Origin: Setoptus koraiensis
Lineage: Eukaryota > Animalia > Arthropoda
Assembly (NCBI GenBank): GCA_048013815.1
Contig: CM106585.1
Location: 4,526,001 to 4,590,000, forward strand
Direction: 5' to 3'
Length of the DNA: 64,000 nucleotides
Part shown: one piece after another, positions 7,323 to 58,948 of the stretch
How the letters are laid out: each line of letters starts with the position of its first letter
How positions within the stretch are numbered: the stretch's first letter is position 1
Notes under the pieces: generated by a model
Seen by the model: only the letters and a program-made list of their open reading frames with translations
Database searches by the model: none
What the model was told of the DNA's origin: nothing
Program-made: the position numbers and the translations under genes

Positions 7323-7360
<38 letters not shown>

Positions 7361-24978: not shown

Positions 24979-26830
24979 ATGTTTAAACAGGTGAAAACAC
25001 TGACCTCTAAATTGGGTTACAAGCAACCAGCCACGGAAAACATCGCAAAATTTATCCTGGATGGTCTAGAAAAAAATAAAAACGAGACACTTATAGTAAG
25101 TGACCGGCTACATCTAGAAATTACTCTTTCTCACTCATCGCATAAACTATTTCTAATTTATTATATTTATCATTCAAACAACAGATTGATGCTGACAGTG
25201 GACGTCGCTGGACTGGTTCTGTATTGAAAAAGGCCGTCATACAATTGGCTAACTTCCTGACAAACGAATGTCAAATCAAGAAAGGAGATGTCTGCAGTCT
25301 CTTCCATACGCCTGATGATCGAGTCGCAATATGTATTCTCGGTATCACATTGGCCGGAGGCGTTACAAATTATCTCAGTGACAGCAACACCGCAAGTAAG
25401 CCATACCGAATACTGTATGACGAAACTGGTTGATTAACAATAATCGCAACACATAATGATCAATTTCTATTTTGCATTTCTATTTTGTCATCATAGGAGA
25501 ACTGCACGACACTGCAGTTGTTCTCAAGTCAAAGTTTCTGATTAGTGATCATGATACCTTGATCAGAGCTCATCCCAATTTGACTGATATCGAGAAGAAT
25601 TTATGTGTCATATCCACTAGTGAACCGGTCACGTCAAAGTTCACTAAGCTTGGTATATCCATACAGAAAATCCTCCAAAAACAATCAGAGGAACCCCACG
25701 AGCTGACTGATGGACTGAAGACTAGGATAAACGCAATCCAGCCTGATGACTTCGCCATAATTCAATTTTCTAGTGGAACTACGGGAAAACCAAAACCAAT
25801 ACCACGAACTAGCAAAAATCTAGTTCATCTTGTAAATTCAGTGGATCACAAAGAGATGATGGATCTGCACAGTGGAGCTGTGATAACAGGTTCATTGCCT
25901 ATAACTCATAGGCCTGGGCTGTGGGCTTTGTTGGCATCTGTCCATTGCGGAAGTACATTTGTGATTTGGAGCCATCTGTCTGACGTTGAGTCTGCACTGG
26001 CTACCATTGAAAAGTTCAAAGTTACCATATTTTCTTCCTCTCTACCATTCCTATCAATGTTAGGTAATGTGCCTGACAAAATTTTCGCAAAATACAATCT
26101 TTCCAGTTTGAAGCATGTAATCACCTCAGGAGCTAAGATCGTGCACGAGAATTTACCCAAAAAGCTCATGGTCCAATTCAATCTAGACAGTCTCAGACAA
26201 TGTTTTGGAATGACAGAATCTGGTTGGGTATTCCTTATTGAACAAACTTTGGCTAAGAATAACTATCTCTCAGTTGGACATGTTTGTCCTGGTATGGAAG
26301 CTAGGGTGGTTGATAGGAAGACCGGCGAAAGTGTTCCAGCCAATGAAAGAGGCGAAATTGCTTTGAAAGGTCCGCAAATATTCCCGGGTTATCTCACAGA
26401 TGTACCTGGAAAATTGAATAGAAATGATTTCGATGATGATGGGTGGTTCCGCATTGGAGATCAAGGTTACTTTAATGACGAGGAGTTAGTTTTCATTGAG
26501 GGTCGCTATAAGGAGAGCATGATCTTGGCAAATAATTACTTGGTGTTCCCTACAGAAATCGAGGCACTTATCAGTGAGCATCCAGCAGTGGAGGGTGTAT
26601 GTGTTGTTAAAAAGGAAGTGAAAAAGGATTTTGTGTATGATGTAGCGAAGGCATGTATCACACTAAAACACGATAGAAAAACTACAGAAGCAGAGATCAT
26701 TGAATTTTTGGCCAAAAGAGATTCGCAAGCGATCCTCATGGGCGGTGTTGAAATTCTTGATAAATTCCCCAGGCTAGGTAATGGAAAAGTGGACAAGCAA
26801 ACTCTAGCCAAATCCATCAAACATGATTGA
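24979..26830 (+). CDS. Luciferase/4-coumarate-CoA-ligase-like acyl-CoA synthetase; join(24979..25095,25185..25395,25497..26830), 553 aa
   Basis: Adenylation motifs FSSGTTGKPK, FGMTE, GEIALKGPQIFPGY, GWFRIGD, GRYKE and NGKVDK. Two GT-AG introns (89 and 101 nt) with consistent phases. The C-terminus is SIKHD, with no PTS1. Confidence 0.93.
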
Positions 26831-27370
26831 GATGTGTGTCAGCATTCGTACATGTCGACTCCTGCTGACGAAATGCGCGATATCTCGAGTTCTATTCTGC
26901 CAATTTTGGCGAACCATATAAAAACGATTTGAACAGACTGAAGTGCTCGTTAGATTAAAACGAAAACAAATTTGAAAAATTATCATGTTTTTGACACGTA
27001 CTCCCCCCCCCCCTTCCCCTAGATATACGATAGTCTTTCACCTAAAGTAATAGCTATTTTACTACATTTGTTTCAACAAGAAAATTTTGAAATGAAATTT
27101 ATTTTTTTTCTACCAATTGATCGGTCTAGTCGCATGGTCTCTAGCAGAATCTGCAGAAGTCTTGGTGCTTTAGAAATCTTGCTCAAAAAAAATATTTCAT
27201 GTTCAGCCTTCAAAGTTCCTGTTTCGGAGATTGTGGAATAATTGTAGTCTGCGAGTTACAGTTTGCTTGGAGATAAACAATTGAATTTAGTTGTACTTCA
27301 ACGTGTAAATAAATCTCAATATTTTATCAACCAGTTTGTCTAACGGGGTTTTAAGTGCCAAGTGGACGAA
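26488..27370 (+). repeat. Direct repeat copy 1 (~883 bp): ACS 3' end + convergent spacer + NRF-6-like 3' end
   Basis: Aligns end to end with 38105-38988 at roughly 95-96% identity by eye. There are 5 substitutions in the 343-bp ACS portion and more in the spacer. Confidence 0.97.
27287..27370 (-). pseudogene. Orphan 3' fragment (28 codons) of the NRF-6-like gene
   Basis: FVHLALKTPLDKLVDKILRFIYTLKYN* versus FVHLALKAPLDKLVDKILRFIYTLKYN* in the intact gene. Homology stops abruptly at 27370. Confidence 0.9.
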
Positions 27371-27904: not shown

Positions 27905-30900
27905 TCACATAACTTTATTTATAATGTTGACAATAGCTTCGGCGTTGTTCGCGAGAAAACTCTCGTGATTTCCAGGAAACTTGTACAAATCTATCCTTCC
28001 ATTGATTGACTGAATGAAATAGTGTAAACAAAGAAGTCAACGATTGTGGTTAGTATGATAGCTGAAGTCACTCAAAGTTATGAGATGATGAGACTCGCTC
28101 CTGATATAAAAAAAAAATTTCTCACCTTGGATAGCGAATAGTCATCGGCTGTTTTAACTCCATCCATATTAGCGATAACATCCTTTTGTGCCCTTATCAG
28201 TGTTGCATCACCAACGTAAGTCTTACTCGGCTTGTAGCTCAACAAGACTTGGGTCCGCCTATAATATCCCTCAATCGCGTCTAAAATATCATTCTGCTTT
28301 GATTTGTCGGTTATATTCAAAGAATGAGAGAGAATCTTGCAAGCTTCCTCAAATTTATCATTGAGGCCAGTCTTAATGGATGATAATTTTTTTAACACCT
28401 CCGCTTGATCGCAGGATCCTTTTGAATGATGCACCACGTATTCCTGGAGAAACTCATTCTCTCTTGATTCCAGCGCGGAACCTGAGAGCTTACCGAGCGA
28501 TTCCGCGACCCAAGGCGACATATCCAGCAGTATGTAGCGGCCTGGAACCAAATTCGTGCGACCCTCTCTTCGTCGATCTTGAATTAAAACTAATAGTTCA
28601 AATGCTATCGCACCACCATACGAATATCCAACAAGATCAACAACTCGAACATTGCTGGGATCCCTCATCTTCTGGTCACTCTTCAGTGTGGTCCAATTGA
28701 GATTTTCTAAATATTCAAAATAATATTCAGCGACTTCTGCGAACGACTTCAGCTTATTCAGCTTGTTTGTATAGTTGAGTCCAACGCATGGTCTAGAAAC
28801 ATTCTTACCAATCGTTTCCAATGGATCAAAAGTAGTATGCAGATGAGTGAGCACAAATACTGGCCGTGCAGTGGATGATATGGGTCGATCGTTCAGCATG
28901 AAGCAGTCTAATTTCGGCAGTTCGATTGGTGGATTAAATGCTGATTGTGTTCCGATCGATATTGAGAAGTTTGCCGCCTTGAGTGTTTCTACTTTCTTAA
29001 GAATCTCCGCATCATCCCCTCGTTTCTTGTTTCCAGAAGTTTTTTCTGTTTCTTCACTAGCGCCAATTTCTCTTATCCTATCGATAGTCAGAGCTCGTAC
29101 CTCTTGGGCCGTGAGAGATTGGCCAAACTCGCGCTCGATATATTGTCTTATCTCGACGGCCATGAGAGAATCTAAACCTAGCTCACCTAGTGTTGTTCCT
29201 CCATCCACCTTGCTGGCGTCTTTCACGCCCAGCACATGCAACACGGCCGCAACGAGATCTCCTCTAGTTGAGCCGCCAGACTTTTTATCTAGCAAAACAA
29301 GACTGGAACATATCGCAAATGGCGAACACAAGAGCTTAGCCAATGTAGAAAAGCACGATGGCATCCTTTGTGGAATGGTTCCACCAATAATTATGTCATT
29401 GCCGCCGAGGGTCTCGAATGCTATCCCGACGTCTCCAATGGCGCCCCATTGAATAGCAAGACCGTGTAGATTGTCTTGGCGACGTTGCTCGCAAACACGT
29501 TCCATGACTGAGTTGGCGTAACCGTAATTGGCTTGGCCTCCGTTGCCCTTGCCACAAGATACGGACGAAAAGGCTACAAACAAGGACATTTCGGGTGCAA
29601 CCTTTCGCGATATCTCGTCTAAGAACACGCACGCATCGGCCTTGGGCTTACAAACAAGATCGAAATCTTCGCTTGATATGTTCTCAAGTAGATTGTCCTT
29701 TAAAACGACGGCCAAGTGAAACAGACCACCGATTTCGCCATTTGGCGCTTGTTTCTTTGCCAATTTGAACAATTTCTCGATACCATCTCGTGTTGTTCCA
29801 TCTGCCATAGTTTTATCGACCACCAATAGTTTGCATTGTTTATTTTCCTCCAATCTCGACAAAACAACTTTCTGGTATCCAGTGCGTGCGCCCGACCGCG
29901 ATGTCACAACAAAATATCGACCACCAACTGATGCAAGCCATTTGATGAGTTCTAGTCCGAAACCACCAAGACCGCCTGTAATGATGTATGTCTTCGATGG
30001 ATCAAGCTCAAATCTAGGTATGGCTCGTAGGCCTCTTTTTGGCACTGATGAATTGGCAGAATGAGCATTCGGTTGTTTTTCTGGCTCGATTTCCACTAGA
30101 ATTTTCCCCATGTGTTTTCCTGTTGCCATGAATCTAAATGCCTCCTCAATTTTCTCTTTAGGAAAACAATGTTGCGGCAACGGCTTGATGTAGCCACTTT
30201 TTAGTCCATCTTGAAATACAGCCAGCCCTTGATCCAATTGTCGCATGAAATTGGGTGTCACTGTATCATAATCAAATACTTTGTCCAAGTGAACAGAATG
30301 GAATGTCTTGTTAATATCCAACATAGTCAATTCCAGTTTTGCATTCATAGCTTGATCGTATTTGCCTATTTCCAAGAATCGACCATTCTTCGCCAGACAT
30401 CTAACACTTGCTTGAAGTTTATCGTCCGCCAATGAATTGAGAACGAGATCAACACCACGACCTGACGTAGCCTCCATGATTTTCTGCTCAAATGAGCAAT
30501 CACGCGAGTTAAATATCTGGGCCTCACTCAGTCCGTCAGGATATTTTTGCAACAGAAATTGACGTTTCTCTTTGCTACCAACTGTGGTGAATACTTTCAA
30601 TTTATGATGCAGAGCCAACGTGATCGCTGCCTGACCAACGCCACCGGAGCCGGCGTGGATCAATATGGATTCGCCTTTTTGTATCTTGCCTCTAACGATT
30701 AGGGCCGCGATAACTGTCATGTAAGTGACAGGTAAAGTGGCTGCATCTTTTAGACTCATGCTGTCAGGAATTTCGAGCAATAGTGACGTTTTTTCGGGAC
30801 ATATAATCTCCGTGGCTATACATCTGCTTGGGATCATACCACACACTCGCTTTCCACTTGTGACATCAATTCCGGAAAATTCGAATCCTAACAAACAATC

Positions 30901-33900
30901 TTCGAGGGCTAATCTAATAGGTAAGGCATCCAGCGGCAATCGCCCAGTTGCCAACATAATATCTCTGAAATTGAGAGCCGAATAGTTAACTTTCACCAAT
31001 CGTTGTTTTTCGCCATCTACTGGATATGCCGTTGGCGTCTGATACCATTTGAAACTTGACAGGTCGCCCAGAGTTGACACATTTGCATAGGCTCTATGGG
31101 TTTCAATCAATTGTGATTCCCCACTTTCACACTTGTCGTCTGTATCGAAATAATCGTCCAATGTGATGTGCATAAATGATCCCCATTGTCCATCAGAGTT
31201 GATACAGTTCCAGAAAAGATCTTTTTTCAGTGCAACTTGGAAATTCGCGCTCTCTCTTATTGTCTCGATCGTCACGTCTTTCTCAAACTTTGTCTTGAAC
31301 GAATGACAGTCGAAAAAGCAGCGCAGATTGGCCAGGGTACCCACCTCTCTTTTGAGACATTGCACCAATCCCACGATACCGTTGAATGGGTTATTTTTCG
31401 TGGCGACACCGCAGAGCCATATAGTTTCCAATTCCTTCTTTTTTCCTTTGTCTGTTTCCTCCTGCTTTAACTCATCCTTCAATTGATTCAGCCAATTAGT
31501 ATAATTGCCATGCTGAACATGTATCAATTTATAAGCTTTGTTACCACAACTTCCTGATTGCTTCTTAGAATAAGTATCATTCTCTTTTAAACTAGAATCA
31601 ACCCCACAACCATTTCTATACAAATATAACGCACATCCGGTGGTGTCCATCTTTTTTCCTATCAATTCAAATTTGTATCGTCTCGCTTCGATCTCTAATA
31701 GCCGATTTCTGGCCTCACATGAACTTTGCGCCTGTTGCATTGCCTTGATGATATGATCATCAATTTCTTTTGATGGAACACTAGTTTGATTGGAGGAGTT
31801 GGTCTTAGCAACATGCTTCAATGCCAGTATAAATCTTTCTGCGAGGCTCAATTTGTATCGTGACATTACCAAGAGAAATCCGCCTTTTCTGATTACCCTC
31901 GCTAAATTGTTGAGTGTCGGAGATAGCTCATACGAATCTTCTTCGTTGATCGTGGTCGCATGACAACTTGTGTCGGATAAACAGACTGCATCGATGGGGC
32001 GATCTCTATTAATCAATGATAAAAGAGATGATTCACTTTCATGGCCGATGTCTTTCAGGATGTGCAATTTGACATTGTCATTTAGATTTTTAAAGTCATT
32101 TGGAGTCGGATGAGATAAAGTGTAGCTGAGTTTCGTTTGTGATGAAATGCTACTTATGAGTTTTTCCAAGTGTCCATAATGAATTGTATTGCCACTATTG
32201 ATTTCTAGTAGACGCAAATCACTTGTAAATTGGCAGCAGTTCTGAACGATTGTTTCTAGCATTGGTCTGGTGAAACGTTCAGTGCTAAAAGTAGAGAGTA
32301 TCATATCTTCACTGAAAATTTTTTCGTGTTTAATCATGGACTGAATCGTAAACGATATCAATGGTTCATTCTTGGTTTTTTCCAGAGAAGATTTCGATGA
32401 ATGGCTCAGCATCGAATCAAGCAATGACAGGAGCGTAAATGGCGAATTCTTGGCCAACTCCTCTGCTTTAGAATTGTCCGGTTGTGATTGTTGTTGACCA
32501 TTTTCTGTCGTTGTTGCTTTGTTCAATTCCTCATGACGAACAATTAAATGATCGCTGAGATATTGCTCTATCTCTTCGCTCTCTACATACTTAATGCCAT
32601 TGCGACTAATAGATTTAAGCAACCCGTTTGTGTCGGCTAACCTCGAGACAATGTTGTTACAAATCTGTTCATATCGCTCTCTGGATTGATTTTTGCTTAA
32701 TTCTAGATCTTTTACGGGTTCCTCGATGTCCAACAAAAATTTATAACTCTCCAATGTTGGCTCAGTCAACTCTCTTCTATTGACTGGCATGGCTTTTATT
32801 CCTCTCATCTCTATCCCATCAGTGATGACAATGCCTAGGATTGGATCGCAATAAGTATCAAAGATGCATTCTACTGATCGCTCTTCCTGATTGGATTGAT
32901 TGTTTTCATTATCGGTCGGTTCAATAGTGCTCTCTTTTGATGATTCTGTCACTATATAATCAACCTCGTTCTTACCAAAAAATTCTTTCACTTTCACGCC
33001 TGACTCGTGTATTTTACCAAGTATCACATCAGGATTGAATCTGATATAATCAAATCCAGTTGGTAAAAATAGAGCACCTTGAGTTGCGTGTGCGCAAATG
33101 GACAAAAATATTGATTGCAAGATGTTGTCAGTCAGAGCTACGAGTTGTCCGTTAAATTTGACCTTGACATGACGTCCGTTGCTCGAAGCCGATTGAATAC
33201 AACGGAATGTTTCACCATAGTCATATCCGTGCACCCTGAATTGTTTGTAGACATCATCATGACTCAGCGATTGTTCATTGTTTTCGTTGCTCAAACTATG
33301 AGCTATATCATCATACAAAAGACCCTTTGGATTGACTTCCGGAGATTTGGCGAAGCCATCAACTACAACTTGGCCACCCTCAGATACCACGAAATAGTCT
33401 GTCGCTGGCTCAAAAATTACAGATAGATCCACTGTTTTTTCTCCTAATATCACTGCTCTATGCAATCTAACATCTCGGAATTCGATAGGTTCATATGGTA
33501 TGACTAATTCACCGTCTTCTCCCCTTCTTTCGGTGAAGCTTATATCATGCATTCCTCGTTTGTTACATGAGAATACATACCACACAACGCATAAATATCC
33601 AGTTGCAGGATTCAGTACTCGGCCCTCCAGTGTATGACCTGAAAGGTATTTTTGGTTTTCATCTAGAAGATTGATGGGTTGTACCACGCGATTTGATTTA
33701 TCTGAAAAATAGTCAGGATATCTTGGAACACAGAACGGAATTGAGTGGTCCCATTTCATTAAAGAACTGATAGATGGCACCTGTTTTCTGACTGGTAATT
33801 TGATTTTCGGATAAAATGAACTCAATGTTGGATTAATGCCCATTTGAAACAGCTTGCCTATTGTGATGAAGAAATTCAGTAAGGGATTCTGGTCATTCTT

Positions 33901-36841
33901 TTTCATCAGTTTCGCATAAGATAATGGCTGATTGCTCGGTATGACTGTTCTGACAGTCGACTCAAATATTGCGTGGGGCCCAATTTCGATGACCACCTGG
34001 TCTGCATGCTGGATTCTTTCAACAGCCTGTCTAAAGTTGACTCTTTCGCACAAATTAGTTGCATAGTATTCTGCATTCGCCATTTTTAGAATTACTGAAT
34101 CATGGTCCTGACAGACACTAGAAAACCATTTATGTTCATTCCTGCTGTAGTCTGTGCCCGGATGCAACAATTTTCGTAAGTTTGCTATCAATTTGTTTTT
34201 GATATCGTCACGCATTATATGGGGATTGTGGAGTGCAAAATCAATGTTCAAGTCGGTGCACTGAATGCTTCCGCTATAATGCTTGCCAAGATATTGCAGA
34301 AACTCTCTGACGTGTTGTTTAGTGCCCGAAACTGTGACAGATTCTGGCCCGTTATCGCACGAAATGCATACAGTTGATGACGATTTTTGCTTCTTTTTTT
34401 CTTCAATGTAATTGTCTATGTTTTTTTGCGCTTCGTCAAAACCTAAACTAATCGCTACCATTGAACCTTCAATGAGATGCGCATTGTCTTTGAGCGTCGA
34501 AGCAATATGGTAGGCTAAAAGAATTGTTTCACGTTCGTCGAAAATTCCATCCGCATAAGCACACGCAAACTCTCCTACTGAATGACCAAGGATTCCACCT
34601 GAGGGTAAGATGTTTAGATGTGATTTTAAGATGTTGGTAAAAGCTATCTGAATAGCGGTTATTCCGACAAACGCATCAATTATTGCGAAGGTGTCGCCAT
34701 TTGCCGTTTCCAGTGATCGTATGAGATCGTATTCGAATGGCTTCAGTATTTCTTGTAATCTTTCAATTGTAGACCAAAACTGACTGAAATCTCGCATGCC
34801 TAACCCCATGCCTTGCCACTGCGAGCCCAAGCCCGGGTACACAAAGTAGCAAGCTACCGGTGCGCTATCTTGCAGATGGTGCTCAGCTCGACCAATATCC
34901 AACTTGTTGTGATCGGAATGACTGTTCGGCGAACTCAACTTACATTCGCAAATAGATCTATAGATTTCTGTTTGGGTTTTCAGGTCCAGTATGACAAAAC
35001 CACGCGCTCTCATCAATCTATCAATTTTGCCACTGCAAAGCGAATCTGTCAGGGCAAAAAAATCTCTTGTCAATGCTTTTTCTTTGACTCCTTCGGACAT
35101 GATAGAGTTGAAGAATGTCTCTAAACCCTGTTCGTGCCTGCCGAACATGAGAACTAAGCGATGACGTTCATTTGTCGCACTAAAATCAACGGTGCCGTCG
35201 TCTTTGAATGGCTCCACGATTGGCCTGTGATTTGAACGCAATATGGCATGCACGTTGGCCCCACCAAAACCATAACAGCTCAATGGTATGATGTGGGTAT
35301 TCAATTTTCGTTTCTCTGTTACAATCTGCACGCGTCCATCAGCAAGCGCTTCAATGTTAGGATTTGGCTTGTTAAAATTTAAACTTTTGTATATCATTTC
35401 ATTGTCGAGCATGAGAGCAACTTTTGCCAATGCACATAAACCACTTGCTACCTCCGAGTGACCCATATTCGTTTTGATGCTAGTGAGTGATAGCGGTCCA
35501 ATAGTTCTTTCGTTCGATGCATCTTTCGGACAATAAACACTCGATATGGCCTCGCACTCTATGGGATCACCGGCGGGTGTTCCAGTTCCGTGGGCCTCAA
35601 TTACTTCAACGTGATTTGAATGTAATCCGACTAGTGAATTTTTTGTTTCTCTTATCAGTGCTCCCTGTGTAATGGCCGCTGGAAAGGTGATGCCTTCTTT
35701 CTTGTAACCGTCCGCGTTCATTCTTGTAGCTAAAACCGTGCCGTATACTCTAAGAGCGGCATGCTTGCGTTGTAGAAAAACCGAAACACAAGCCTCGGAT
35801 TTGCAATATCCATCCACATCAGCGTCACCAAAACGAGTATAGCCAGTGGGTGATAACATTTTTAGTTTTGCGAATACTATGGTATTTTTAGGATCCAACG
35901 CTAAATTAACAGCGCAGACAATGGCCTGGTCAAGTTTACCGTGTTGGAAACTCAAAACTGCCTGTTGAAAGGCTCCGAAACCAGAGGCGCAGGCTAGATC
36001 GTATGCACAGGCTGGGCCTCGAAAGTCGTAGTACCTAGCGATTGCAGTTGCAAATTGAACGCTATATCCGCCTCCATCAAAATGGAGATCGTCACGCATT
36101 GCCTGCTCGGTTTCGCTCGTGAGAAAACTCAAAAAAATTCCAGTTTTAGTCCCTCGCAGGGAGGCGGGATTGACACCTGATAGGGGATTGGAATTGTTTG
36201 TTAGATTCGAACTCTTAGATTCGTTGCAGATTGAAGTACTCGGCTGCGCCTCAAGTTTGCATGCGAGAGTCTAAACTAGTTATCATAGTTCATTCAAACC
36301 TGCTGAGATTGAGATTTTTAGAATCAAACAGAGACGATTACTCACCTGAGTCCAAAATGGATTCGTAGACTCTCTCATATAACAATCTCAACTGGGGGTC
36401 AACAATTCTGTCCGCTCCGTAACCAAAAAATTCTCCATCAAATCGCCATACATCCTTCATGCGACCAGCCCTCGGTGGTAAATCCCACACTTGACGGGGA
36501 AAGCGAACCTCATCATTCTCAGTGCACATATCGCAGTTGTCGGTTAATAATTGTTTCAGTTCATCCATATTATCGGCGTTAGGGAAATAACCAGCCAACC
36601 CTGAAATTACAACATCGGTATCTGGAATGCTAAAAGGATCAACTATTTTCTCCGCTGCTTTTTTTGCTGATTTCATTGTAGTTGTTACAGTTTCAGAATA
36701 TTGCTGATTTTTCTCATAACTGGAACCATTTTCAGAGTGCGCCATTTCAAAGCCATCAATGGCATTCTCTGTGGTGTCCATTGAATTGTCGATCGGGTTA
36801 CTCTCACCCAACTGTTGAAGGTCTGTCGATAAAACAGGCAT
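27905..36841 (-). CDS. FASN: Type I fatty acid synthase-family megasynthase (KS-MAT-DH-pseudoMT-ER-KR-ACP-TE); complement(join(27905..28009,28126..36176,36346..36841)), 2883 aa; atypical MAT
   Basis: KS DLAC/EAHGTGT/NMGHSE; MAT GHSVG; DH HTLEGRVLNP and D in TDNILQ; ER HAGSGGVG; KR GGLGGFG and GQANY; ACP GLDSL; TE GYSYG, LLD and GNH in the last exon. Introns of 169 and 116 nt with matching phases. Confidence 0.95.
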
Positions 36842-38104: not shown

Positions 38105-38447
38105 AGTTTTCATTGAGGGTCGCTATAAGGAGAGCATGATCTTGGCAAATAATTACTTGGTGTTCCCTACAGAAATCGAGGCACTTATCAGCGAGCATCC
38201 AGCAGTGGAGGGTGTATGTGTTGTTAAAAAGGAAGTGAAAAAGGATTTTGTGTATGATGTAGCGAAGGCATGTGTCACACTAAAACACGATAGAAAAACT
38301 ACAGAAGCAGAGATCATTGAATTTTTGGCCAAAAGAGATTCGCAAGCGATCCTCATGGGCGGTGTTGAGATTCTTGATAAATTCCCCAGGCTAAGTAATG
38401 GGAAAGTGGACAAGCAAACTCTAGCCAAATCCATCAAACATGATTGA
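38105..38447 (+). pseudogene. 5'-truncated duplicate of the acyl-CoA synthetase (C-terminal subdomain only)
   Basis: Matches the last ~113 codons of the ACS with only I>V and G>S changes. The frame and stop are intact, with an in-frame ATG at 38136. Confidence 0.85.
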
Positions 38448-38988
38448 GATGTGTGTCAGTATTCGTACATGTCGACTCCCGCTGACGAAATGCGCGATAT
38501 CTCGAGTTCTATTATACCAATTTCGGCGAACCATATAAAAATGATATGAACAGACTGAAGTGCTCGTTAGATTAAAACGAAAACAAATTTGAAAAATTAT
38601 CATGTTTTTGACACGTACTCCACTCCCCTTCCCTTAAATATACGATAATCTTTCAGCTAAAGTAATAACTATTTTACTACATTTGTTTCAACACGAAAAT
38701 TTTAAAATGGAATTTATTTTTTTTTTCTATCAATTGATCGGTCTAGTCGCATGGTCTCTAGCAGAATCTGCAGAAGTCTTGGTGCTTTAGAAATCTTGCT
38801 CAAAAAAAAACATTTCATGTTCAGCCTCCAGAGTTCCTGTTTCGGAGATTGTGGAATAATTGTAGTCTGCGAGTTACAGTTTGCTTAGAGATAAACAATT
38901 GAATTTAGTTGTACTTCAACGTGTAAATAAATCTCAATATTTTATCAACCAGTTTGTCTAACGGGGCTTTAAGTGCCAAGTGGACGAA
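38105..38988 (+). repeat. Direct repeat copy 2 (~884 bp)
   Basis: Counterpart of 26488-27370; its right end is the true 3' end of the NRF-6-like gene. Confidence 0.97.
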
Positions 38989-41978
38989 CAACGATAGTGC
39001 CAATACTGTCGGCGCAGCGGCGCAAGCTTCTTTCGACATCTTCATAAGACTAAAAGGACCAAGGCCGTGGTAATCGCTAAAGACAAAAAAATAAATAACC
39101 TCCCATTGAATCAAATACACACAATAGGTGATGCGACTACACACAATCCAGAGTTTATGTCTTAGCCATCGTGACTGTTTGGCAACGTCTGTAGATAAAC
39201 GTATTATCACAATTAGGTTGCAGAATATCCAAGCGACTATCATGCATGGCAATTGTAACGACACAATAAATTTTCTCAGATTTTCATATTCATTATCAAT
39301 GCCCATGATACTATCGTAGAAATCAGTTGCGATGACTATCAATCCCGGCATAGCAAATATAGGCAGGTGTGCCCAAAGAGCCAATTTGAACCAATTGCCT
39401 CGCATCCAACGGGGCCAATAGTTTTTGTTTTTCTGCGCTGATTTCACATTTAACAGCTTTCCTCCGATCCTTTTTGTCTCATCATCCTGTTTTAACTGCT
39501 GCCCTTGAAAAGTGTTATACTCATAGATAATGATGCCTGCTAAAACTCCGGCCAATGCCTGTGGCAACCTGAAGAATAGGTCGCGAAGAATAGCAATGTC
39601 ATAGTACTTGGCATCCCTAACAAGTGTGCATCACGAATATGACAGGTGACAGGTAATTGTTAAGGTTAATTGTTATCGTCTGTGGCATTGAGTGTTTAAT
39701 TTGATCAGTTTAAGCTCTAGTTTACTTACACTGCTATTGCTATTAGGAAGTACCTTTGGAATGCACGACTGTCGCCAGCGGAACTGTTGTACATCCACTC
39801 GAACGTCAGGTAAAACGAAACTGACATAAATAGGGCCACCAGGGCCACTCTAAAACGTCGGAATCTTTTCACATAATTGATTTGATGGTCATTTATTGAT
39901 AGATGGATTGTTGTTAGATGGAAGAATAGATAATATATGATTATAATATAATGTAATTGGGCCGGTTTAGATTGACATAACATGTTTACTTACCTCAGCA
40001 TGAGGTAGGTGAGGGGCGGTAGTAGAAGGAATACTCTGAGTAATGCTTCCAGGAACCAGGCTTCGACTTTGCATGGCAGAATGATGTGGTGCTTAAATTG
40101 ATTGAAGGGCAATATATAATGATACCATTCGCTGGTTTGTCTGCACGCTCCCCGGAACGAATGTCTATTAGTCCCGTAGTCCCACGAAGGTCCACTCCCT
40201 AACAGGGGTGCCAAAGAATAACTGAACCAGTACAGTATCATGTAAACGGGGCACATCTTCAAGAACAAGTTTACCTGAATTGCCAAATAAGCTAATGGAT
40301 TGACAAGATACCTATAGTGCCTCTGTGCATTGTTCAATATTCTCATAACAGTAAATCCGAACATTACGCCCGCAACAATGAAGAATGTATCCAATATCAG
40401 TGGAAACGATTCTAGAATGAAAATCATTCTTGATGACAACAAACCAATCATCAGACCGGGTGTCGTTATTTTGAAAGTGTTTAGAAGAATGGTGTGGCCA
40501 AAAATTAACGAATAAGCACAAACAACTTTGATCATGTTGATTGGCACCAAATTAACGTGTTCCGTTCGATCAATTATATTGTCGACAGACACAAGCTCTC
40601 GGAAGCTCTGCTGAAGTGAAAATATTCCAATCAATTGGTCTATGAAATCACTTTTATAATTTGTCTTCAGCTGGCTCTTAGTCTCATCGATAGGCCGATT
40701 ATTGCCACGATTATCCACCCCGGCCTCATTAGGGGCGACAAATTTTTCCATTTCAGTCAATGGCAACATCCCCCTAGGATCGTAGTTGTCTATTCCAACA
40801 ATATCACTCTCAACGCGATCTTGTTGTTTATACGCCGTTTGTTGTTGTTGCTCAAAAGCGACAACAAGTTTTTCAGGTTTAGGCTGCCGAATAAAACAGT
40901 CATAAATAGTGACCGAGAAAACAATCGATAGCCACACAACGCCGAAACCAATGAGCGCCCATCCGGCTGGCTGCAACTGACGTAACGGGCTACTCTCATC
41001 TGGCAGACAATATAATTCAACCATTTTGTACCTGTCTTTTAAGTGTTCGGGAAAATTCATTAGCAGTAGCTTCTCCATGATCTCGCCATTTGGGCCTCCA
41101 TTAGCTGTTGCTGTTGACCAAGATTGGGTATCGCATGTCTCGGGCAAACACATTCCCGCCAATATTCTTGGCTTTGGCACGAATGTGTCGTTCGTCGGCC
41201 AACTGACAGACACCAATTTGCCATAACAATAACGAGTCTTGATTATATTTGTGGCTTTGTTTGTTTCGCCTCCATGGCTCACCGGCTCATCATCCAACCG
41301 ACTGTTGTTGTCGTTTTGAATATCAGTAAGATCGAATTGGAATCTGAGACATTGCTCATAAGATCCGAACCACATTGATTTTCCCAGATAAGAGGCAGCC
41401 TCGGGACGACCGAATGAGTCGATATAATTGGACAGGTTGAATTGAATTTCACCGTTGCTAAACATCAATTTAGTGTTGCTTTCGGGCTCGTTGCTTGTAA
41501 GTTGCTTAAGTAGCCATTGCAAATGTTGCCGGCACAGCAAATTGTTGACTGGTAACCCACCCGACACTGCTAGATCCTCTGGAGATGAATAAGTGAATGG
41601 GTCAGTAGCATAAAAACTAAAATACTCGAATGATCTCAAAGCGTGATACTGCAACAATTCACCCTGTTTCAGCTTAGTGGGGCCAATTGCCATTCTCACT
41701 AGATCATGTGGATTGATGTATTCTTCCATTCGTATCAGACTATTTGATGTTTTATTCCACAGGAATGGAAATCTTTTGATCTTTTCATCTTGATTCCCGA
41801 AAATGTGTCGCTTATATCTGTGGAAACTTTTGTTGTCTATTAAGTTGTCAGTTGATACTGTTCTTGCTGCTTCCTCTTGGCTTCTTGAATCAACTTGTGG
41901 CGACTTTGACGAACAAAGATTCGCCTCTATCACTAACAAGGTGATTGAAATAAACGTTAATCCGCGTAGAAATGACAT
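38905..41978 (-). CDS. Nose-resistant-to-fluoxetine-6-like protein (signal peptide + NRF domain + acyltransferase-3 membrane domain); complement(join(38905..39616,39730..39864,39994..41978)), ~943 aa
   Basis: Signal peptide; NRF domain IDSFGRPEA...WFGSYEQC and GMCLPETC; AT3 K-x10-H, DTFF and SRITYCVYL. GTAAGT donors at 39993 and 39729, all phase 2. An alternative in-phase acceptor would start exon 3 at 39568. Confidence 0.88.
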
Positions 41979-50111: not shown

Positions 50112-53100
50112 AATTTTCGAATAACAATTATATCGAGACTCGACCTGAAAAAAAAGAACCTCATTACATCCTCATCAGCGCCACGAATGGATCTGTATTC
50201 TTCCGTATGCTTTGTCTGTGCCATATGAAATCGATCAAGTGCACGCTGATGTCATCGATTTGTATTCTATATTCACCGAGCTGGACCTTGTAAATACAAC
50301 CTCATCATCGCATATCAACAGTTCCAACTCACCGGATGCTCCGATGGCTCGGGTCAGACGATTGTATTGACATTATGCCCGAAAATACCCAAAACAGCCG
50401 AATTGGGCGCGGCTACTGTTCGCTACCATAACCAGAACTGGCATGGATCCTACTGATGACTGATTGGACTGCTCACATCCGCATTGATCGGATCGCTCAT
50501 GTTTGCTGTTACCGGAATTATGGTTGATGGTTTCAATCTTTCCGTATCTTTTCGCTCCTAGATCCAACCCTCTGATGATAGCTTGACCCTCTGATGATGG
50601 GGCTATTTTATAACACATGGGTCAATTGGGCGCCAGAATCGGTTGCATCGTCGCGCATCAAAGCATTTTAAGAGATACGAAATAAAAAATGCTGCGTTGC
50701 TGTTTCGTCTCGTTTCGGCGAAATTTTCATCGGAGAAAAACAGTTTCTGAGCGAAAAACAGAGTCTAGTCTAAAGCCAATCCAGTCGCTAAGTCATTTTC
50801 CGTTCTTGATTTGTAAGCATTTTTCATATTGTTTGAAACTCAATCCATCAAATTTCCATGACCCCGGGACGGCGATCTCACATACTGAAATACTCCGTAG
50901 TTTTGAATTGGGAGCTCTTTGTCCATCTAGGATCTCCTATTTGTTTGGCTGGTGAGTTTTTTCCGACTCACTACTGTCTGTCACTAGAGTGTAGGCCAGG
51001 CGTCAGGCAATAAAGATCCAACTTTCGGAGCACGCCAGGCTCGAGAGATGTGAAAAAGCAGCTATCTTGTCAAAGATGAAAATGTACACGCGCCATGTAC
51101 GGAGCAAAGTATGATCTTTCGCGTGGATTGATCGCCTTCTCACTAACTAATTAGTTTAGCCAGCCGCTTGAGTGGGAGCGTTCATCTGGCGATAAATCGA
51201 CGGCCTCTTAACAATGACTTTACTCTTACAATTTGCTGACGACAATTCAGGTTGGGTCAAGTTTGTCGAAATGAAACGGCCAAACAATTGTAGGCGCCAT
51301 ATATTATACAGCGGCACACGTTGAGCGGCAAATTGTTGTCGCTTTTTGTTTTTTCGAGCAAAATCTAGGTCAGACAGAAGAGTAGAGAAAGTATGTCGCC
51401 CGTTGCAAGTGATGAAAGTGGTCACCAAGGAGCAGAGAAAGAGAGAATCGCGATTAGTATAATATGTCACCTCTGGATGGCATGTTAAATGAAGCATGGC
51501 TCCTCAATTGAGCACTTGGCAACATTGTCTGTTCGGCTGGTTGGCCAAATTCTAGACCAGTTCAAAGCGATTGGAAGTAGTGCAACTCTATTGCATTATC
51601 TTGTCTCTCGTCTTTCTTTAATGATTCGAGCGCATAAATTGGAGTCACTCGAGCAACCAACTGCACCAACTCGTTGCACCACTTGTGCCCCAGATGCCGT
51701 CTGAGCCATGCAAGTCGGTTATGTCTATCTGGCGAGCTAGTTTTAGTTGGACGAGGCCCCATACGATATACAAGAGAGTGAGGCGGCAGTTATCATCAGT
51801 ATATATTATTATGGTTAATGGACAATATTTTTATTATTACTCTACTTTTCTGTCTATTTCTCGTTATGAAGTTATTTCTCTCTCTCTCTCTCACTCTCTT
51901 TCTTTGCTCGTTGTTGATACACCCTTGTATATCGTCGACTGTTCGCTGTAGGCACGCACTACCAACACTGAGCCACTTAAACTCAACTCGAGTCACTCAC
52001 GTGAAAGTTTTTCGGTTAGTCTCAAACAAGCCGGAAAGAGGTCGACTCAATTCAAATATAATAACGCGCGCACATACAGGACATTGTGGGCCGTGATTAG
52101 TTCAGTGTGGCTCGGAGAGGCTCTCGCTAAAAATAGATTCCGTAATTGATTGCACCGGCTGAGTTTTCTCTTGGATTCCTTTGGTTCATTCAGATTTTTC
52201 AAGCACCCTGACCGCGGCCCCAAAAAAAAAACAGAAACAGAAGCAACTCGAAACAGAATATTCCGAGGATAGGATTATTATTTGTTATTGTCCGCGTTAT
52301 TTGTTGCCCAAACATATCCATGCTACCTGCCCAGTGGCCCCTGTTACACTTGCTGCCTCGACACACGTCGATCCATTGCGCTGTACGATTATCTGGCTGG
52401 ATAAATCACTGATTGATCTCTGTGATGGCGAGGATGGCCAAACAGCTTACAGTCAATGGGTGAGTGTACAATTCACAATTGGCGCCTGCGTGATGATGAT
52501 CGCGAACCGATAAACAAAGTGAACAGATAAAATTTTGTAAGTTTGTCTCGATAAGCGGCTTTCTCTGGCCTCTCTTCGCGCGGGCAAAGAGATAGGCGAG
52601 AGCTGCCTTTCTAACGGGAGAACGGCTCGGGATAGTTGATAGCAGATTGCCGCTAGAGGCCCAAAGATACCTAATCGAGTCTCTGGGGCTGCAACTTGCC
52701 CTCAATAGCCGCTCGAAGCCACTGGATTGCGGGCCCAGCCAGAGATTTTCTGCAAGCTTAAGCACCAAAATAGATAGGGAGTTTTGATGGCGGCGCCGGC
52801 GCTGCGCATATTTTTCATCAATAACAACTGCTGGCTCAATTGGAAATTTGCATAAATCGCCGGCGTTCGTTTATCTCGTCGTCGGCGTTTTAAGCGCCTC
52901 GCACACAACAACAAACAACGCCGAGAAGAAGATTATGCCGAGTATATATGTACGTGGCGAGCACATTTGAATATGCGAGCAAGAGAGAATTGGGGCCAGC
53001 TCGCTCGGATATTCTGCGCGATATCTTATCTCTTGGAAGCCTGGCTCGGCTCGGCTCGGCTGGCTCTGCGGCGCAGCTCGGCCCCCGAGAGCTTACGACG

Positions 53101-53428
53101 CGCAAGTTGGGAGAAAGAATCGCGCCGATGGATCAATTTCGTCTCGGCTCACCTTGGCCCAGTGTGCGCCCAGTGATGCCGAAACCTTTTATTATCACCA
53201 TGTAATTACATTTACACAACTTGTATCACCGACGAGTGTATTCACTGCCATTGTCCCTACAACGGGCGACTGAGCCAGCGAAAACTGTCATCGCCACAAT
53301 GAGTCCGATGAGTTTATTCCGCGCAACGCCAGACCCGGCGCCACCGACCGGGGCCCCAAATCTGATCAGTGTGCGTCCGATTTAATTTGATCGCTTGATC
53401 AACGTATCACGACCGACCTACGGCGCAA

Positions 53429-56400
53429 CTAGAGCTCGCTTGTGTCCCGGCGATTGTATGAATTGCCCGACGAGTAGTGATGCGATCGAAACGAGTGCAT
53501 CTGACTTCCGCGACGATAATGGCCGCCGCCCGTCGAATGTTGACCCGATCCGCCGCTCGAGTGGTGCCCGCCAAACAAACTGTGACTGGTTGTGTGGCCG
53601 CTAGTGCCGAAGGCGCCCGAGTACGAGGCTCGCGACGACAGGGCGCCCCCTCCCGATCCGTGATGGTGATGGCTCTTGGAATAGTAGTTGCTTCCGCTGC
53701 GACTGCCGCCCCCGCCAGACCGGCCGTGACCCGGCCCGTCCAGTCCGCCGCCCCCGCCGCCGTGATGGTGGTGCGACGACGACCATCCGCCCGAGCTGTG
53801 TCCGCCGCCGCCACCCGACCCGATGCCCCCGCCTCCGCTTGAGAAACCGCCGAAGCCGCCGCCGCCGCTGCTCGCGTGATGATGATGATGCGAGGAGCCG
53901 CTCGAATGATGATTGTCCTGATAGGCGACAGACTTTTTGTGATGGCCCGCCAGCACCGAATAGAAGGGCCCGCCGAAGCCGCCGCCCACCGACATTGAGT
54001 GGCGGCCCGCGTCAAACGAGCCCGCACCGCCGCCCGACGACCCGAGCGCGCCCGATATGAGGCCGCCGCCCGCCGAATGGTGGTTGCCCAGGCCGCCCGC
54101 GCCCGTCGAGCCCAGCGATGAGCCCAGCGACGTTTCCTTTTGCCTGTGCGCATTGTACAAATTCAGGCCGGGTATTATGTGTATGCGCAAATTTCCGTGC
54201 TCATCAACGTCCAATTGTCGCCTCAAAATGGGCCCCTTCCGCTGAAAGGTAACGTGCGATTTGCAGCAACAATAATAAAAGAGTTTGTTGAAGGCCTCGC
54301 GAAAGTCCCTATTGGTGAGCGCGTACACGTAACTGTACGAGCAGCAATTTAGCGCACTGATCCACCAGACGCCGTCGCGTAACTCTTGCGTAATTTGGTG
54401 TCTTGGTATGATGCAAGCTATGACAATTAGTGGTAGCCACATAATTAAATTGAAAGCGTACACAATGATGTTTGATTTTAATAATTGATCGTCGCACATG
54501 TAGGCATAGGTGCACAGGGTGGCGACCGTCTGATGTTGTTGCGGTTGCTGTTTCTGGTGCTGCTGCTGACCGGCAGAGGGCACTGACTGACTTCCGGTTG
54601 TCAGTTGATTGTTGTTTGGGCTTGGGTTTGTTTGCGACAACGGTTGCATAGCGACCACCACTGACGACGGTCCAAGCAGAGCGTTGGATTGGGCCGCATT
54701 GCCGCCAGTGGCGCCCCTATCGGCGCCTCGCTCCGTGTAAGTGCGGTTGTCAGTGTTGCGGGTTCCCGCGACGGGGGCCGACACTGTGACGCACGCCTCT
54801 TTGCGGTCCTTGGCAGAGCCCGACAACATTGATGATTGATCTGGTAGCTGCTGTTGATTAGATTGGTCGTTTTTGTTGTTGTTGAGCGTTTGCGCGTTTG
54901 CAATGGACGGCGCCGACTGCTGCTTCTCGGTGCCCGTCGCCGGCATTGGGCCGAACCTGCGCCTACCCCCGCTTCCGCTACGGACCGGTGCCGCCATGTG
55001 AGCGCCATTGACGGTTGTCGGGTTGCCGGCGGCCGATCTGGCCGTCGCGCCGGCCGTATCGGCGCCCGTTTGCGGCTCGCCGCCGCCGGGCCTCATGCAA
55101 GCGGCCTCTTGCGCGTAGTGAAGCTTGCGGCTTGAGGCCACCGTTTGGGGTCGCACTTGCTCGTGCTCAACCTGAAAAAACTGCCCATTTGCAGCGTCTT
55201 CTGAGTCGTGGTACAAACGCGACGATCTCGGCAACGACTGGTGACGTTCTAGGTGAAGCATGCGCATTTGGTGCTCCAATTGGTGTTGTTGTTGTTGCTG
55301 TTGCTGATAGTGATTGAGCCAGTCGGCCTGATTAGGCTGGCAATTGATGTCGTAGTAAGGCTGTTGTTGTTGGTTGTAGTGCTGCTGTTGTTGCATGTTG
55401 TTGTTGTTCATTGTGTTGGTTGCGCCGGCCATATTGTTGCAGGCCGGTTGTTGCAGGGATAAAACGTTTTGCGTGGGCGGCAGCGTGGCCGACGGCGGAG
55501 CCGAGAAAGAGGGCGCCCTCCGAAGGAACAGGCCGCTTTGCAAATCTTGCGCTGCCATGCCCAATTGCCTGGCGTCGCTGGCCCTATTGTTAGCGGATAA
55601 ACTCATTCGCAGTTGCTGCTCCAAATTGGAGCGCTCTTGCTGGCTGATGGGGCCCAGTCGGTTCGTGTTGATGGGCGCGGGCGGGTTCCTGGGCTGGCCG
55701 GCCGTCGACGTTGTCAGCTGGTTGCTCAAATGTTGCTGATACTGGAGGCTCGTTGCCGGTTGACCGGGCGTCATTGTTGTCGGCGTGGCTGTTGTCTGTT
55801 GTTGTTGTTGTTGTTGTTGTTGTAGCTGTTGTTGTTGTTGTTGCTGTTGTAGCTGTTGTTGTTGTTGCTGTTGTTGAGCTGCAGTGATAGGCGGCGCCAT
55901 TCTGGGGGCGCCGCCGTTGCTGTGACTTATCTTGTTTGCATTATTAAAATAATTATTTTTGTTGCTATTAATTATTATACTATTGCTCGGCTCGGCCGCG
56001 ACAGGTAGCTGCTGCTCACCTGACGCGCCGACCGAGTTAATTGTGTGCAGCTCGGCGGCATTACTGGCCAGCTCATTGTTGTTGCAAGCGGTTGCTGTTG
56101 GCGGCAATGGCTGGCCATCAGCAACCGCCGAGCCAACCGCCTGATTGATGGATGTTACAATGCTTGAGCTGATGGTTGTGGTGGGCGCTGCGGGGGCCCC
56201 GGTTGCCATGGTTGCGGCCGCCCCCGTCGATGGCTTCATGTCTAAAATTTGGTTTGCTGCTGCTGCCACTGCTGCCACTGCTGGCTGCTGCTGGGCCGCC
56301 ACGCCGGGCCCCTTTGTCGCTGTTGGCGGATAATTGAGCTTACCTGTCATGCTGCCTGTGGCACTGCTCGTGGTGACCTGTGCAAGATGGAGCGTGTTGT

Positions 56401-58783: not shown

Positions 58784-58948
58784 TTTTTTTTATTCTGTTG
58801 TGTTGGCCTGTCGAAGGGCGTATTTGAGCGTTTTCGCGCGCGGGCAATGGGCTATTTTCTGCTTGTTTCACAAGCGCTGTCGTCGAGCATGCCCCGGTTT
58901 TTCTTTTTTCTTTCGAGCCAATTGCCGGAGCGGCAGAGAGCTGCCTGG

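What the first reader, a model, noticed from the sequence alone, without database searches (positions are those of the whole stretch)
34228..34581. FAS MAT domain lacks the malonyl-binding arginine (R to I) and has ALHN instead of AFHS
Seen: the catalytic Ser (GHSVG, codon 34581-34579) is followed exactly 25 codons later by ATT/Ile (34506-34504) in ...ILLAYHIAS. This aligns without gaps to mammalian ...VLAAYWRGQ, where the Arg is R606. The second motif reads DFALHN (Leu 34233-34231, His 34230-34228) versus mammalian MAFHS. Known: this Arg (FabD R117, mammalian FAS R606) binds the malonyl carboxylate. Replacing it sharply reduces malonyl transfer and favours non-carboxylated acyl groups, and PKS starter-loading ATs often lack it. 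The residue before the His shapes extender selectivity. KS, DH, ER, KR, ACP and TE catalytic residues all look intact, so this is not general decay. Inference: the MAT is a starter-loading AT, so extender must come in trans (another FAS subunit or a stand-alone malonyl transferase), or it uses a different extender chemistry.
Basis: partly seen in the sequence, partly recalled or inferred. Interest (0 to 1): 0.8.

Follow-up and report, generated by a model that had tools for sequence, protein, structure and literature searches.

The report
Mite fatty-acid synthases lacking malonyl-binding arginine
A mite fatty-acid-synthase gene really does carry isoleucine where all other animal versions have the arginine that grips the malonyl building block, and this is an old, inherited trait of a whole group of plant-feeding mites rather than an error or a dying gene.

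Summary
The gene has three exons on the minus strand and encodes 2883 aa. Its MAT domain has Ser698, then Ile723 exactly 25 residues later, aligned without gaps to human FAS R606. It reads FALHN where human FAS reads MAFHS.

The change is not private to this gene. All 13 members of one well-supported clade have I, L or M there. The named members are the eriophyoid mites Aceria and Fragariocoptes. All 46 other animal FAS-like proteins in the comparison alignment keep Arg-Gly. The clade's sister group is the Arg-bearing FAS of sarcoptiform mites. No Arg-bearing eriophyoid FAS turned up.

The gene is intact. All catalytic motifs of KS, DH, ER, KR, ACP and TE are present. Two public runs hold contigs with intron 1 removed exactly as predicted.

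Within the clade the MAT has diverged about 1.4 times more than the KS; in ordinary FASs the ratio is 1.0. No replacement basic residue is conserved across the clade.

My best reading is a loader biased towards uncharged primers that is still the enzyme's only acyltransferase.

The parts
36346..36841 (-). Exon 1: start codon, 70-aa N-terminal extension and first part of the KS domain
   Evidence: ORF and Pfam ketoacyl-synt hit. GT donor at 36345. The splice is seen in contigs of runs X7 and X8.
36177..36345 (-). Intron 1 (169 nt, GT..AG)
   Evidence: Predicted from the sequence. Contigs of X7 and X8 skip exactly 169 nt, 36173->36343 with 'cut +3'.
28126..36176 (-). Exon 2 (8051 nt): rest of KS, MAT, DH, pseudo-ME/pseudo-KR, ER, KR, ACP and most of TE
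   Evidence: Single 2684-codon ORF. Pfam domains. Catalytic motifs intact.
28010..28125 (-). Intron 2 (116 nt, GT..AG), predicted only
   Evidence: Donor gtgaga after ...LSK and acceptor ttcattcag. It was not covered by the reads call.
27905..28009 (-). Exon 3: end of TE with the catalytic His (GNHESF), plus the stop codon
   Evidence: Translation aligns with GDHRTL / GNHESF of other FASs.
33832..34845 (-). MAT (malonyl/acetyl transferase) domain, residues 610-947 of the 2883-aa protein
   Evidence: Pfam Acyl_transf_1, E 2.7e-40. AlphaFold model pLDDT 84, pTM 0.87. Best structural matches are mouse and human FAS MAT, TM 0.80-0.84.
34579..34581 (-). Catalytic Ser698 (GHSVG), equivalent to human S581
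   Evidence: Invariant in the clade.
34504..34509 (-). His722-Ile723, equivalent to human W605-R606. This is the lost carboxylate anchor.
   Evidence: The column is I/L/M in 13 of 13 clade members and R in 46 of 46 others.
34225..34239 (-). F812-A-L814-H815-N816, equivalent to human M680-A-F682-H683-S684
   Evidence: The catalytic His is invariant. S684N (or H) is clade-wide. F682L occurs only in the window gene and its nearest relatives.
34042..34044 (-). Arg877 at the position of human P742, a candidate (unproven) substitute basic residue lining the acyl tunnel
   Evidence: It is K in P0001 and P0253, Q in P0003, P in most others and in 38 of 46 canonical sequences. The tunnel role of P742 comes from PMC6954729.
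26488..27370 (+). Left copy of an ~883-bp direct repeat flanking the synthase; contains the 3' end of the acyl-CoA ligase gene (context only)
   Evidence: the repeat finder families D1-D3, 90-98% identity, spacing about 11617.
38105..38988 (+). Right copy of the direct repeat; holds a dead copy of the ligase 3' end (38136-38447) (context only)

Best explanation
Shown. The Ile is an inherited hallmark of a mite FAS lineage whose named members are eriophyoid. The malonyl-anchoring Arg was replaced by I/L/M before the lineage split into at least two paralog groups. The same lineage shares other MAT changes (human numbering): S497P, M499L, W605 to a polar residue, S684N and V740C (the last in 12 of 13 members). 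The window gene is an intact, spliced and transcribed member on one of the longer branches of the faster-evolving paralog group. It sits at a new locus between 883-bp direct repeats. Its MAT keeps the fold and the Ser-His dyad. It has no basic residue that is conserved across the clade as a replacement. In this clade the MAT has diverged about 1.4 times faster relative to the KS than in ordinary FASs.

Inferred. The MAT is still the enzyme's only loader. Without the salt bridge it should favour uncharged acyl-CoA primers, as yeast FAS AT with Ile306 and the rat R606A mutant do. It would pass malonyl more slowly, perhaps helped by polar pocket residues (His722, Asn816, Arg877). That raises the primer-to-extender ratio. 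The synthase would then most likely extend preformed or unusual primers by a few cycles, or make shorter chains, rather than produce bulk palmitate.
For: Alignment to human FAS. Clade-wide I/L/M against R in 46 of 46 others. Monophyly at 100% support, with the Arg-bearing sarcoptiform mite FAS as sister. In the exhaustive profile search the four best single-AT representatives all lack Arg, and the 25 lower-ranked single-AT hits checked all keep it. All catalytic motifs are intact. Only one acyltransferase domain is present. Spliced contigs show transcription. Clade-specific switched sites, with no clade-wide gained K/R. The MAT/KS distance ratio has a median of 1.37 in the clade and 1.00 in canonical FASs, and MAT identity is below KS identity in 5 of 5 independent clade pairs. 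The model fits mouse and human MAT at TM 0.8. Literature: R606 holds the extender carboxylate and its loss alters specificity (PMC6954729). Yeast AT Ile306 is the counterpart of the Arg, and weakening malonyl binding shifts products to short chains (PMC5353594).
Against: There is no biochemical evidence. Murine R606A lost rather than gained octanoyl transfer (PMC6954729), so Arg loss does not by itself make a good primer loader. The faster MAT evolution could also mean reduced importance of the domain. The differences listed between public runs and the window give 14 synonymous to 22 non-synonymous codons. This is a truncated sample, mostly from the non-catalytic middle region, but it suggests fairly weak constraint on this particular paralog. 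If they do, malonyl transfer may be normal. I could not scan the whole genome for an Arg-bearing FAS or a stand-alone malonyl transferase.
Confidence: 0.5

Rival explanations
1. Compensated pocket. The MAT still loads malonyl (or methylmalonyl) efficiently. The carboxylate is held by neutral or alternative donors such as the polar residue at 605, Asn/His at 684 and, in this gene, Arg877. On this view these enzymes are the ordinary housekeeping FASs of eriophyoid mites.
For: The clade branches where the eriophyoid orthologue of the acariform FAS would be expected, and no Arg-bearing eriophyoid FAS was found. Paralog group B has short branches and highly conserved KS, ER, KR and ACP domains, as a housekeeping enzyme would. 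Position 605 is H/R/N/Q/Y and position 684 is N/H across the clade, all hydrogen-bond donors. The extension machinery is complete.
Against: Every Arg-less acyltransferase I found described, or recall, is a loader of uncharged acyl groups, for example yeast AT Ile306 (PMC5353594). Arg mutants lose most malonyl transfer (PMC6954729 and work cited there). No replacement basic residue is conserved. The MAT is the least constrained catalytic domain in the clade, which is odd for a precisely re-engineered pocket.
Confidence: 0.25
2. The MAT loads starters only, and malonyl reaches the ACP in trans, from another FAS subunit in a heterodimer or from a stand-alone malonyl-CoA:ACP transacylase such as the mitochondrial type.
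For: Ile at the Arg position is what the acetyl-only yeast AT has (PMC5353594). An acyl-CoA ligase gene lies next door. This genome holds at least two more FAS genes according to unchecked scan notes.
Against: No precedent is known to me for trans loading of an animal type I FAS. The one other FAS of this genome with a note on this residue is also reported as Arg-less (s1-359747, unchecked). No Arg-bearing eriophyoid FAS was seen. The ligase adjacency is recent, judged by the 97-98% identical flanking repeats. It is absent at the loci of relatives P0001, P0003, P0004 and P0253.
Confidence: 0.17
3. Relaxed selection or incipient pseudogene. This recently relocated duplicate is drifting, and the MAT changes have no adaptive meaning in this copy.
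For: One of the longer terminal branches in the clade (0.68-0.69; P0007 is similar at 0.71-0.76). 14 synonymous to 22 non-synonymous differences among the listed variants. New locus between young direct repeats.
Against: The 2883-codon reading frame is unbroken and every catalytic motif is kept. The mRNA is spliced. A second, about 88-92% identical copy or haplotype differs by a net 12-nt in-frame deletion, not a frameshift. The Arg loss itself long predates this duplicate.
Confidence: 0.07
4. Sequencing or assembly error at the codon.
For: None found. The only gap is that the reads table was truncated, so the codon itself was not printed.
Against: ATT is two changes from any Arg codon. Independent runs cover the site with very few differences. 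All relatives share the trait.
Confidence: 0.01

Closest known systems
Metazoan type I FAS malonyl/acetyl transferase (human 3HHD/2JFD, mouse 5MY0/6ROP)
   Same: Same fold (TM 0.80-0.84, about 30% identity). Same position in a KS-MAT-DH-ER-KR-ACP-TE synthase. Same Ser-His dyad, the Gln of GSQW and Phe553.
   Different: R606 becomes Ile and G607 becomes Ala. Further changes are S497P, M499L, W605H, F682L, S684N, V740C and P742R. The MAT evolves faster than the rest of the enzyme.
Yeast FAS acetyl transferase (AT) domain, Ile306
   Same: It is a natural transferase of the same superfamily with Ile at the position of the malonyl-binding Arg, and it loads acetyl only (PMC5353594).
   Different: Yeast FAS has a second transferase (MPT, Arg1834) for malonyl. 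The mite enzyme has a single transferase domain.
Engineered R606A/K mutants of rat and mouse FAS
   Same: They remove the same side chain. Specificity is altered and malonyl handling is weakened (PMC6954729, citing Rangan and Smith 1997).
   Different: They are laboratory point mutants in an otherwise unchanged pocket. Here the change is ancient and comes with about ten other lineage-wide substitutions.
Animal FAS-like polyketide synthases (AFPKs; EcPKS1/2, PDB 9CTL, 9CQ1)
   Same: They are animal FAS relatives with specialised products and are widespread in arthropods (PMC10764717). Their structural similarity to the model equals that of FAS.
   Different: EcPKS2 keeps the Arg (Ser605, Arg630) and has a dead ER (PMC11831141). 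The mite enzyme keeps its ER and TE motifs and branches with mite FASs.
Starter-loading acyltransferases of modular PKSs (for example the avermectin loading AT, PDB 4RL1)
   Same: They lack the carboxylate-binding Arg and load uncharged acyl-CoAs. This is from my own knowledge. 4RL1 is a distant sequence hit.
   Different: They sit in dedicated loading modules beside separate extender ATs. Sequence similarity is far lower than to animal MAT.

Membership tests
Metazoan type I fatty acid synthase | Domain order KS-MAT-DH-(pseudoME/pseudoKR)-ER-KR-ACP-TE on one polypeptide | tested here: met
   Pfam hits in this order. The TE motifs GYSYG, LLDMSP and GNHESF were found by alignment.
Metazoan type I fatty acid synthase | Catalytic residues of KS (Cys, His, His, Lys), DH (His), ER and KR (NADPH motifs; Ser, Tyr, Asn), ACP (Ser) and TE (Ser, Asp, His) | tested here: met
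   All are present in the window protein and in nearly all clade members.
Metazoan type I fatty acid synthase | MAT with a Ser-His dyad plus the malonyl-binding Arg (human R606) followed by Gly | tested here: not met
   Ser and His are present. The Arg is Ile and the Gly is Ala. All 46 other animal sequences in the alignment have R-G.
Metazoan type I fatty acid synthase | Phylogenetic placement inside the animal FAS clade | tested here: met
   The clade is sister to sarcoptiform mite FAS, inside arthropod FAS, with fungal PKS as outgroup.
Metazoan type I fatty acid synthase | Makes palmitate from acetyl-CoA, malonyl-CoA and NADPH | not testable with these tools
   This needs an enzyme assay.
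Animal FAS-like polyketide synthase (AFPK) | KS that branches apart from the animal FAS clade, or scores between the FAS and PKS models (PMC10764717) | tested here: inconclusive
   There is a long stem branch (0.45-0.46), but it lies within the mite FAS lineage. The paper's HMM scoring was not reproduced, and it reports a FAS-AFPK continuum in arthropods.
Animal FAS-like polyketide synthase (AFPK) | Selective or missing reduction steps (for example an inactive ER) giving non-fatty-acid products | tested here: not met
   The ER NADPH motif and the KR and DH residues are intact.
Starter-only loading acyltransferase (yeast FAS AT, PKS loading AT) | No carboxylate-binding Arg in the pocket | tested here: met
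   Ile723. No clade-conserved substitute K/R.
Starter-only loading acyltransferase (yeast FAS AT, PKS loading AT) | Works beside a second, extender-loading acyltransferase in the same synthase | tested here: not met
   There is only one Acyl_transf_1 domain in the 2883 aa.
Starter-only loading acyltransferase (yeast FAS AT, PKS loading AT) | Transfers uncharged acyl groups and not malonyl | not testable with these tools
   This needs transacylation kinetics.

The most novel reading that the evidence does not exclude
Eriophyoid mites have no FAS with the 'invariant' arginine at all. Their only cytosolic FAS lineage has worked without it since before the group diversified. If so, either an acyltransferase recognises malonyl by a new, uncharged mechanism, or an animal type I FAS receives its extender by a route not yet described. 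The faster-evolving MAT would then be diversifying primer choice among paralogs.
Probability: 0.3. Interest if true: 0.8.

Novelty: new variant of a known kind. Interest (0 to 1): 0.6.

Why it matters
The Arg at this position is treated as a universal feature of malonyl-transferring acyltransferases, from bacterial FabD to human FAS. It is the main handle used to engineer loading specificity. A natural, long-lived animal lineage that dropped it, while keeping every other part of the synthase, is a ready-made experiment on two questions: how far a MAT can be retuned, and what a FAS does when extender loading is weakened. The lineage comprises economically important plant-parasitic mites. A lineage-specific pocket in what may be their only fatty acid synthase could also interest mite lipid biology.

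Tried and rejected
- I searched the word-indexed protein database with a 332-aa MAT piece, hoping for near-identical fragments from the public runs to compute dN/dS. Only distant hits came back.
- The cluster look-up gave no organism names for the unnamed relatives. Only Aceria and Fragariocoptes anchor the clade taxonomically.
- At first I took P0010 and P0012 (Arg-bearing) for the canonical eriophyoid FAS. The wider tree places them inside Sarcoptiformes, with Oppia, Dermatophagoides and Sarcoptes, so I dropped that idea.
- Read laying allows one call and its difference table was truncated (189 rows hidden). I could neither print the codon in other runs nor compute a proper dN/dS.
- The exhaustive profile search ranks by whole-protein score, so multi-AT bacterial PKSs filled most of the 150 rows. 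I used only the single-AT hits.
- The structure tool returns no coordinates, so the question of a compensating Arg in the pocket stays open.
- The gene-cluster idea (ligase + synthase + acyltransferase) is not supported by synteny. Four relatives have other neighbours, and two of them share an EamA transporter gene.
- Literature searches found nothing on eriophyoid FAS, and the AFPK survey does not mention the Arg or mites.
- Rfam found nothing in the window.
Full report
**Observation.** The minus strand between 28078 and 36132 is one open frame of 2684 codons. Pfam finds KS, KS C-terminal extension, acyltransferase, DH, FAS pseudo-KR, ER, KR and ACP along it, in that order. They are TCA Ser at 34581-34579, ATT Ile at 34506-34504, CTC Leu at 34233-34231 and CAC His at 34230-34228. 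phmmer against all PDB chains gives human FAS KS-MAT (3HHD) as best hit, E 4e-60. The stretch from the GHS motif to the Ile aligns without a gap. Window AYHIAS lies on human AYWRGQ, and window FALHN lies on human MAFHS. The 3HHD chain index runs two ahead of native numbering, so the aligned human residues are S581, R606 and H683. ATT is two substitutions from every Arg codon, so a single miscalled base cannot be the cause.

**Gene model.** An upstream ORF (36841-36346) starts with Met and carries the first part of the KS. It joins the large exon through a GT..AG intron of 169 nt. A short third exon (28009-27905) supplies the TE histidine (GNHESF) and the stop codon. The product is 2883 aa. In that numbering the nucleophile is Ser698 and the substituted residue is Ile723. 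Contigs of public runs X7 and X8, which are 95-99% identical to the window, skip exactly those 169 nt. The gene is therefore transcribed and spliced as predicted. Contigs of X3, X4 and X7 cover the Ser and Ile codons with 2, 7 and 2 differences in 765, 997 and 273 nt. The difference table was cut, so the codon itself was not printed. This is the one gap in the direct check.

**The trait belongs to a lineage, not to this gene.** A word-indexed search with the MAT region found its best relatives at only 33-39% identity. The named ones are from the eriophyoid mites Aceria tosichella and Fragariocoptes setiger. An earlier scan note says the genome is a mite, which agrees. In an alignment, every one of these relatives has Leu, Ile or Met at the Arg column and Asn or His after the catalytic His. 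In a larger alignment the column is I/L/M in 13 of 13 clade members and R in 46 of 46 other animal FAS-like proteins. The next residue is Gly in 46 of 46 others but Ala in 8 of 13 clade members.

An exhaustive HMMER search of 1.84 billion cluster representatives used a profile of the clade's MAT. The four best single-acyltransferase hits all lack Arg (L, L, I, M). The 25 lower-ranked single-acyltransferase hits I checked all keep it.

KS-MAT trees recover the 13 sequences as one clade with 100% SH-aLRT support on a long stem (0.45-0.46). The clade divides into two groups.
- Group A holds the window gene, P0253, P0003, P0001 and P0007, on long branches.
- Group B holds Aceria, both Fragariocoptes proteins and others, on short branches.

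The sister group is the FAS of sarcoptiform mites (Oppia, Dermatophagoides, Sarcoptes and a set of metagenomic relatives), all with Arg. The clade therefore sits where the eriophyoid orthologue of the ordinary mite FAS should be. No Arg-bearing protein attributable to an eriophyoid mite appeared in any search. This is suggestive rather than proof, because I could not scan whole genomes.

Unchecked scan notes report two further FAS genes in this genome, one of them also described as Arg-less. Losses of the Arg occur sporadically elsewhere in arthropod FAS-like paralogs: Ile in a Vanessa protein, and Cys or Met in three others. The change is rare but not unique.

**State of the gene.** All the following motifs are present in the window protein and in nearly all clade members.
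- KS: Cys, both His and the Lys
- DH: His
- ER and KR: nucleotide-binding motifs
- KR: Ser, Tyr and Asn
- ACP: Ser
- TE: Ser, Asp and His

The ACP motif is almost invariant across the clade. The MAT keeps the GHSxG elbow, the catalytic His and the Gln of GSQW. An AlphaFold model of the window MAT (pLDDT 84, pTM 0.87) superposes on mouse and human FAS MAT and on the sacoglossan AFPKs with TM 0.80-0.84. General decay is therefore excluded.

Two observations do point to weaker constraint.
- The variants listed between the window and other runs fall in 36 codons, 14 synonymous and 22 non-synonymous. This is a truncated sample, mostly from the non-catalytic middle region.
- The window gene's terminal branch (0.68-0.69) is long, though P0007's (0.71-0.76) is similar.

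The reads also show a second copy or haplotype at about 88-92% identity. It differs by a net 12-nt, frame-preserving deletion.

**What changed in the pocket.** Besides R606, several MAT sites are fixed to a different residue in the clade than in other animals. In human numbering they are F496L, S497P, M499L (an oxyanion-hole residue), I513F, A517W, C523L, C593L/I, D647E, S684N, S731N and A762G. In addition, W605 is replaced by H/R/N/Q/Y and V740 by Cys.

No column shows a Lys or Arg gained across the whole clade. The window protein has its own Arg877 at the position of human P742. Its nearest relatives have K, K, Q and P there. A published mouse structure places P742 in the wall of the tunnel that holds the Ser-bound acyl chain (PMC6954729). 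This makes Arg877 a candidate substitute, but the structure tool gives no coordinates, so I could not test it.

A further result is that the MAT is the least conserved catalytic domain in this clade. The MAT/KS distance ratio has a median of 1.37 in the clade and 1.00 among canonical FASs. MAT identity is below KS identity by 11-32 points in five independent clade pairs. Among canonical pairs the gap ranges from -4 to +11 points.

[quoted passage not shown] In yeast FAS the acetyl-only transferase has Ile306 as the counterpart of this Arg. Weakening malonyl binding in the malonyl/palmitoyl transferase (R1834K) shifts products to short chains (PMC5353594). The characterised animal FAS-like PKS EcPKS2 keeps the Arg (Ser605, Arg630), close to the malonyl carboxylate (PMC11831141).

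The synthase, however, has only one acyltransferase domain. Its KS is built for decarboxylative condensation and its reducing domains are intact. It must therefore receive a carboxylated extender, and no Arg-bearing partner has been found in the lineage. I therefore favour a single MAT that is biased towards uncharged primers and still passes malonyl at a reduced rate. The likely outcome is primer extension by a few cycles or shorter products (confidence about 0.5).

The rivals are as follows.
- A fully compensated pocket, with these enzymes acting as ordinary housekeeping FASs (0.25). The phylogenetic position and the tight conservation of group B make this a serious option.
- Drift of a young duplicate (0.07).
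- Sequencing or assembly error (0.01).

The murine R606A result, which lost octanoyl transfer, warns that Arg loss alone does not make a good primer loader (PMC6954729).

**Genomic context.** An acyl-CoA ligase gene (AMP-binding, 25472-26830, plus strand) lies on one side. An NRF-domain membrane protein gene (39990-41978, minus strand) lies on the other. The synthase sits between two copies of an ~883-bp repeat, 90-98% identical (97-98% over most of its length): 26488-27370 and 38105-38988. The repeat includes a dead copy of the ligase 3' end, so the adjacency looks recent. The loci of relatives P0001, P0003, P0004 and P0253 have no ligase or NRF gene. P0001 and P0253 share an EamA transporter gene downstream instead. 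The neighbourhood therefore gives little support for a dedicated starter-supplying cluster.

**Comparison and novelty.** By architecture, fold and phylogeny this is an animal type I FAS. It fails one defining feature of that family's MAT, the Arg-Gly pair. It does not fit the starter-only acyltransferases either, because those work beside a second transferase. I found no paper describing an animal FAS lineage without this Arg. The arthropod AFPK survey mentions neither mites nor the residue. I rate it a new variant of a known kind, of moderate to high interest. If eriophyoid mites truly have no Arg-bearing FAS, the finding would be considerably more striking.

Noticed in passing
window 26488-27370 and 38105-38988: An ~883-bp direct repeat (90-98% identical over three blocks, spacing about 11.6 kb) brackets the synthase. 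The right copy holds a dead duplicate of the last 103 codons of the acyl-CoA ligase (38136-38447). It looks like a recent insertion or duplication that placed the synthase between two convergent genes.
   Followed up: partly
window 30450-36400 in runs X3, X4, X8: Public runs hold a second version of this gene at about 88-92% identity, at roughly half the depth. It has a net 12-nt in-frame deletion at 33498-33535 and a 1-nt deletion plus 1-nt insertion at 35633/35638. It could be a recent paralog or a divergent haplotype; it could not be retrieved.
   Followed up: no
L004 (P0001) 10837-12762 and L005 (P0253) 10950-13190: Two group-A relatives share an EamA-domain transporter gene just downstream of the synthase. 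The window gene does not, which suggests that it is the relocated copy.
   Followed up: partly
proteins P0001-P0011, P0246, P0253 (whole clade): The ACP core motif is nearly invariant, and ER and KR are highly conserved across the clade. The MAT and TE are the fastest-evolving domains. P0007 has lost the TE Ser and His.
   Followed up: partly
P0019 (Vanessa cardui FAS-like), P0032, P0040, P0122: Independent losses of the same Arg (to Ile, Cys, Met and Cys) occur in a few other arthropod FAS-like paralogs. The Vanessa protein also has the PGLG variant of the SGMG motif.
   Followed up: no
window 1-2000, 6000-10000 and 52000-60000: These blocks have much higher G+C (0.53-0.67) than the roughly 0.40 of the rest of the window. 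There were no Rfam hits anywhere in the window.
   Followed up: no
window 24979-26830: The acyl-CoA ligase appears to be split over at least three short exons or ORFs (24979-25227, 25224-25433, 25472-26830). Only the last was checked against Pfam.
   Followed up: no
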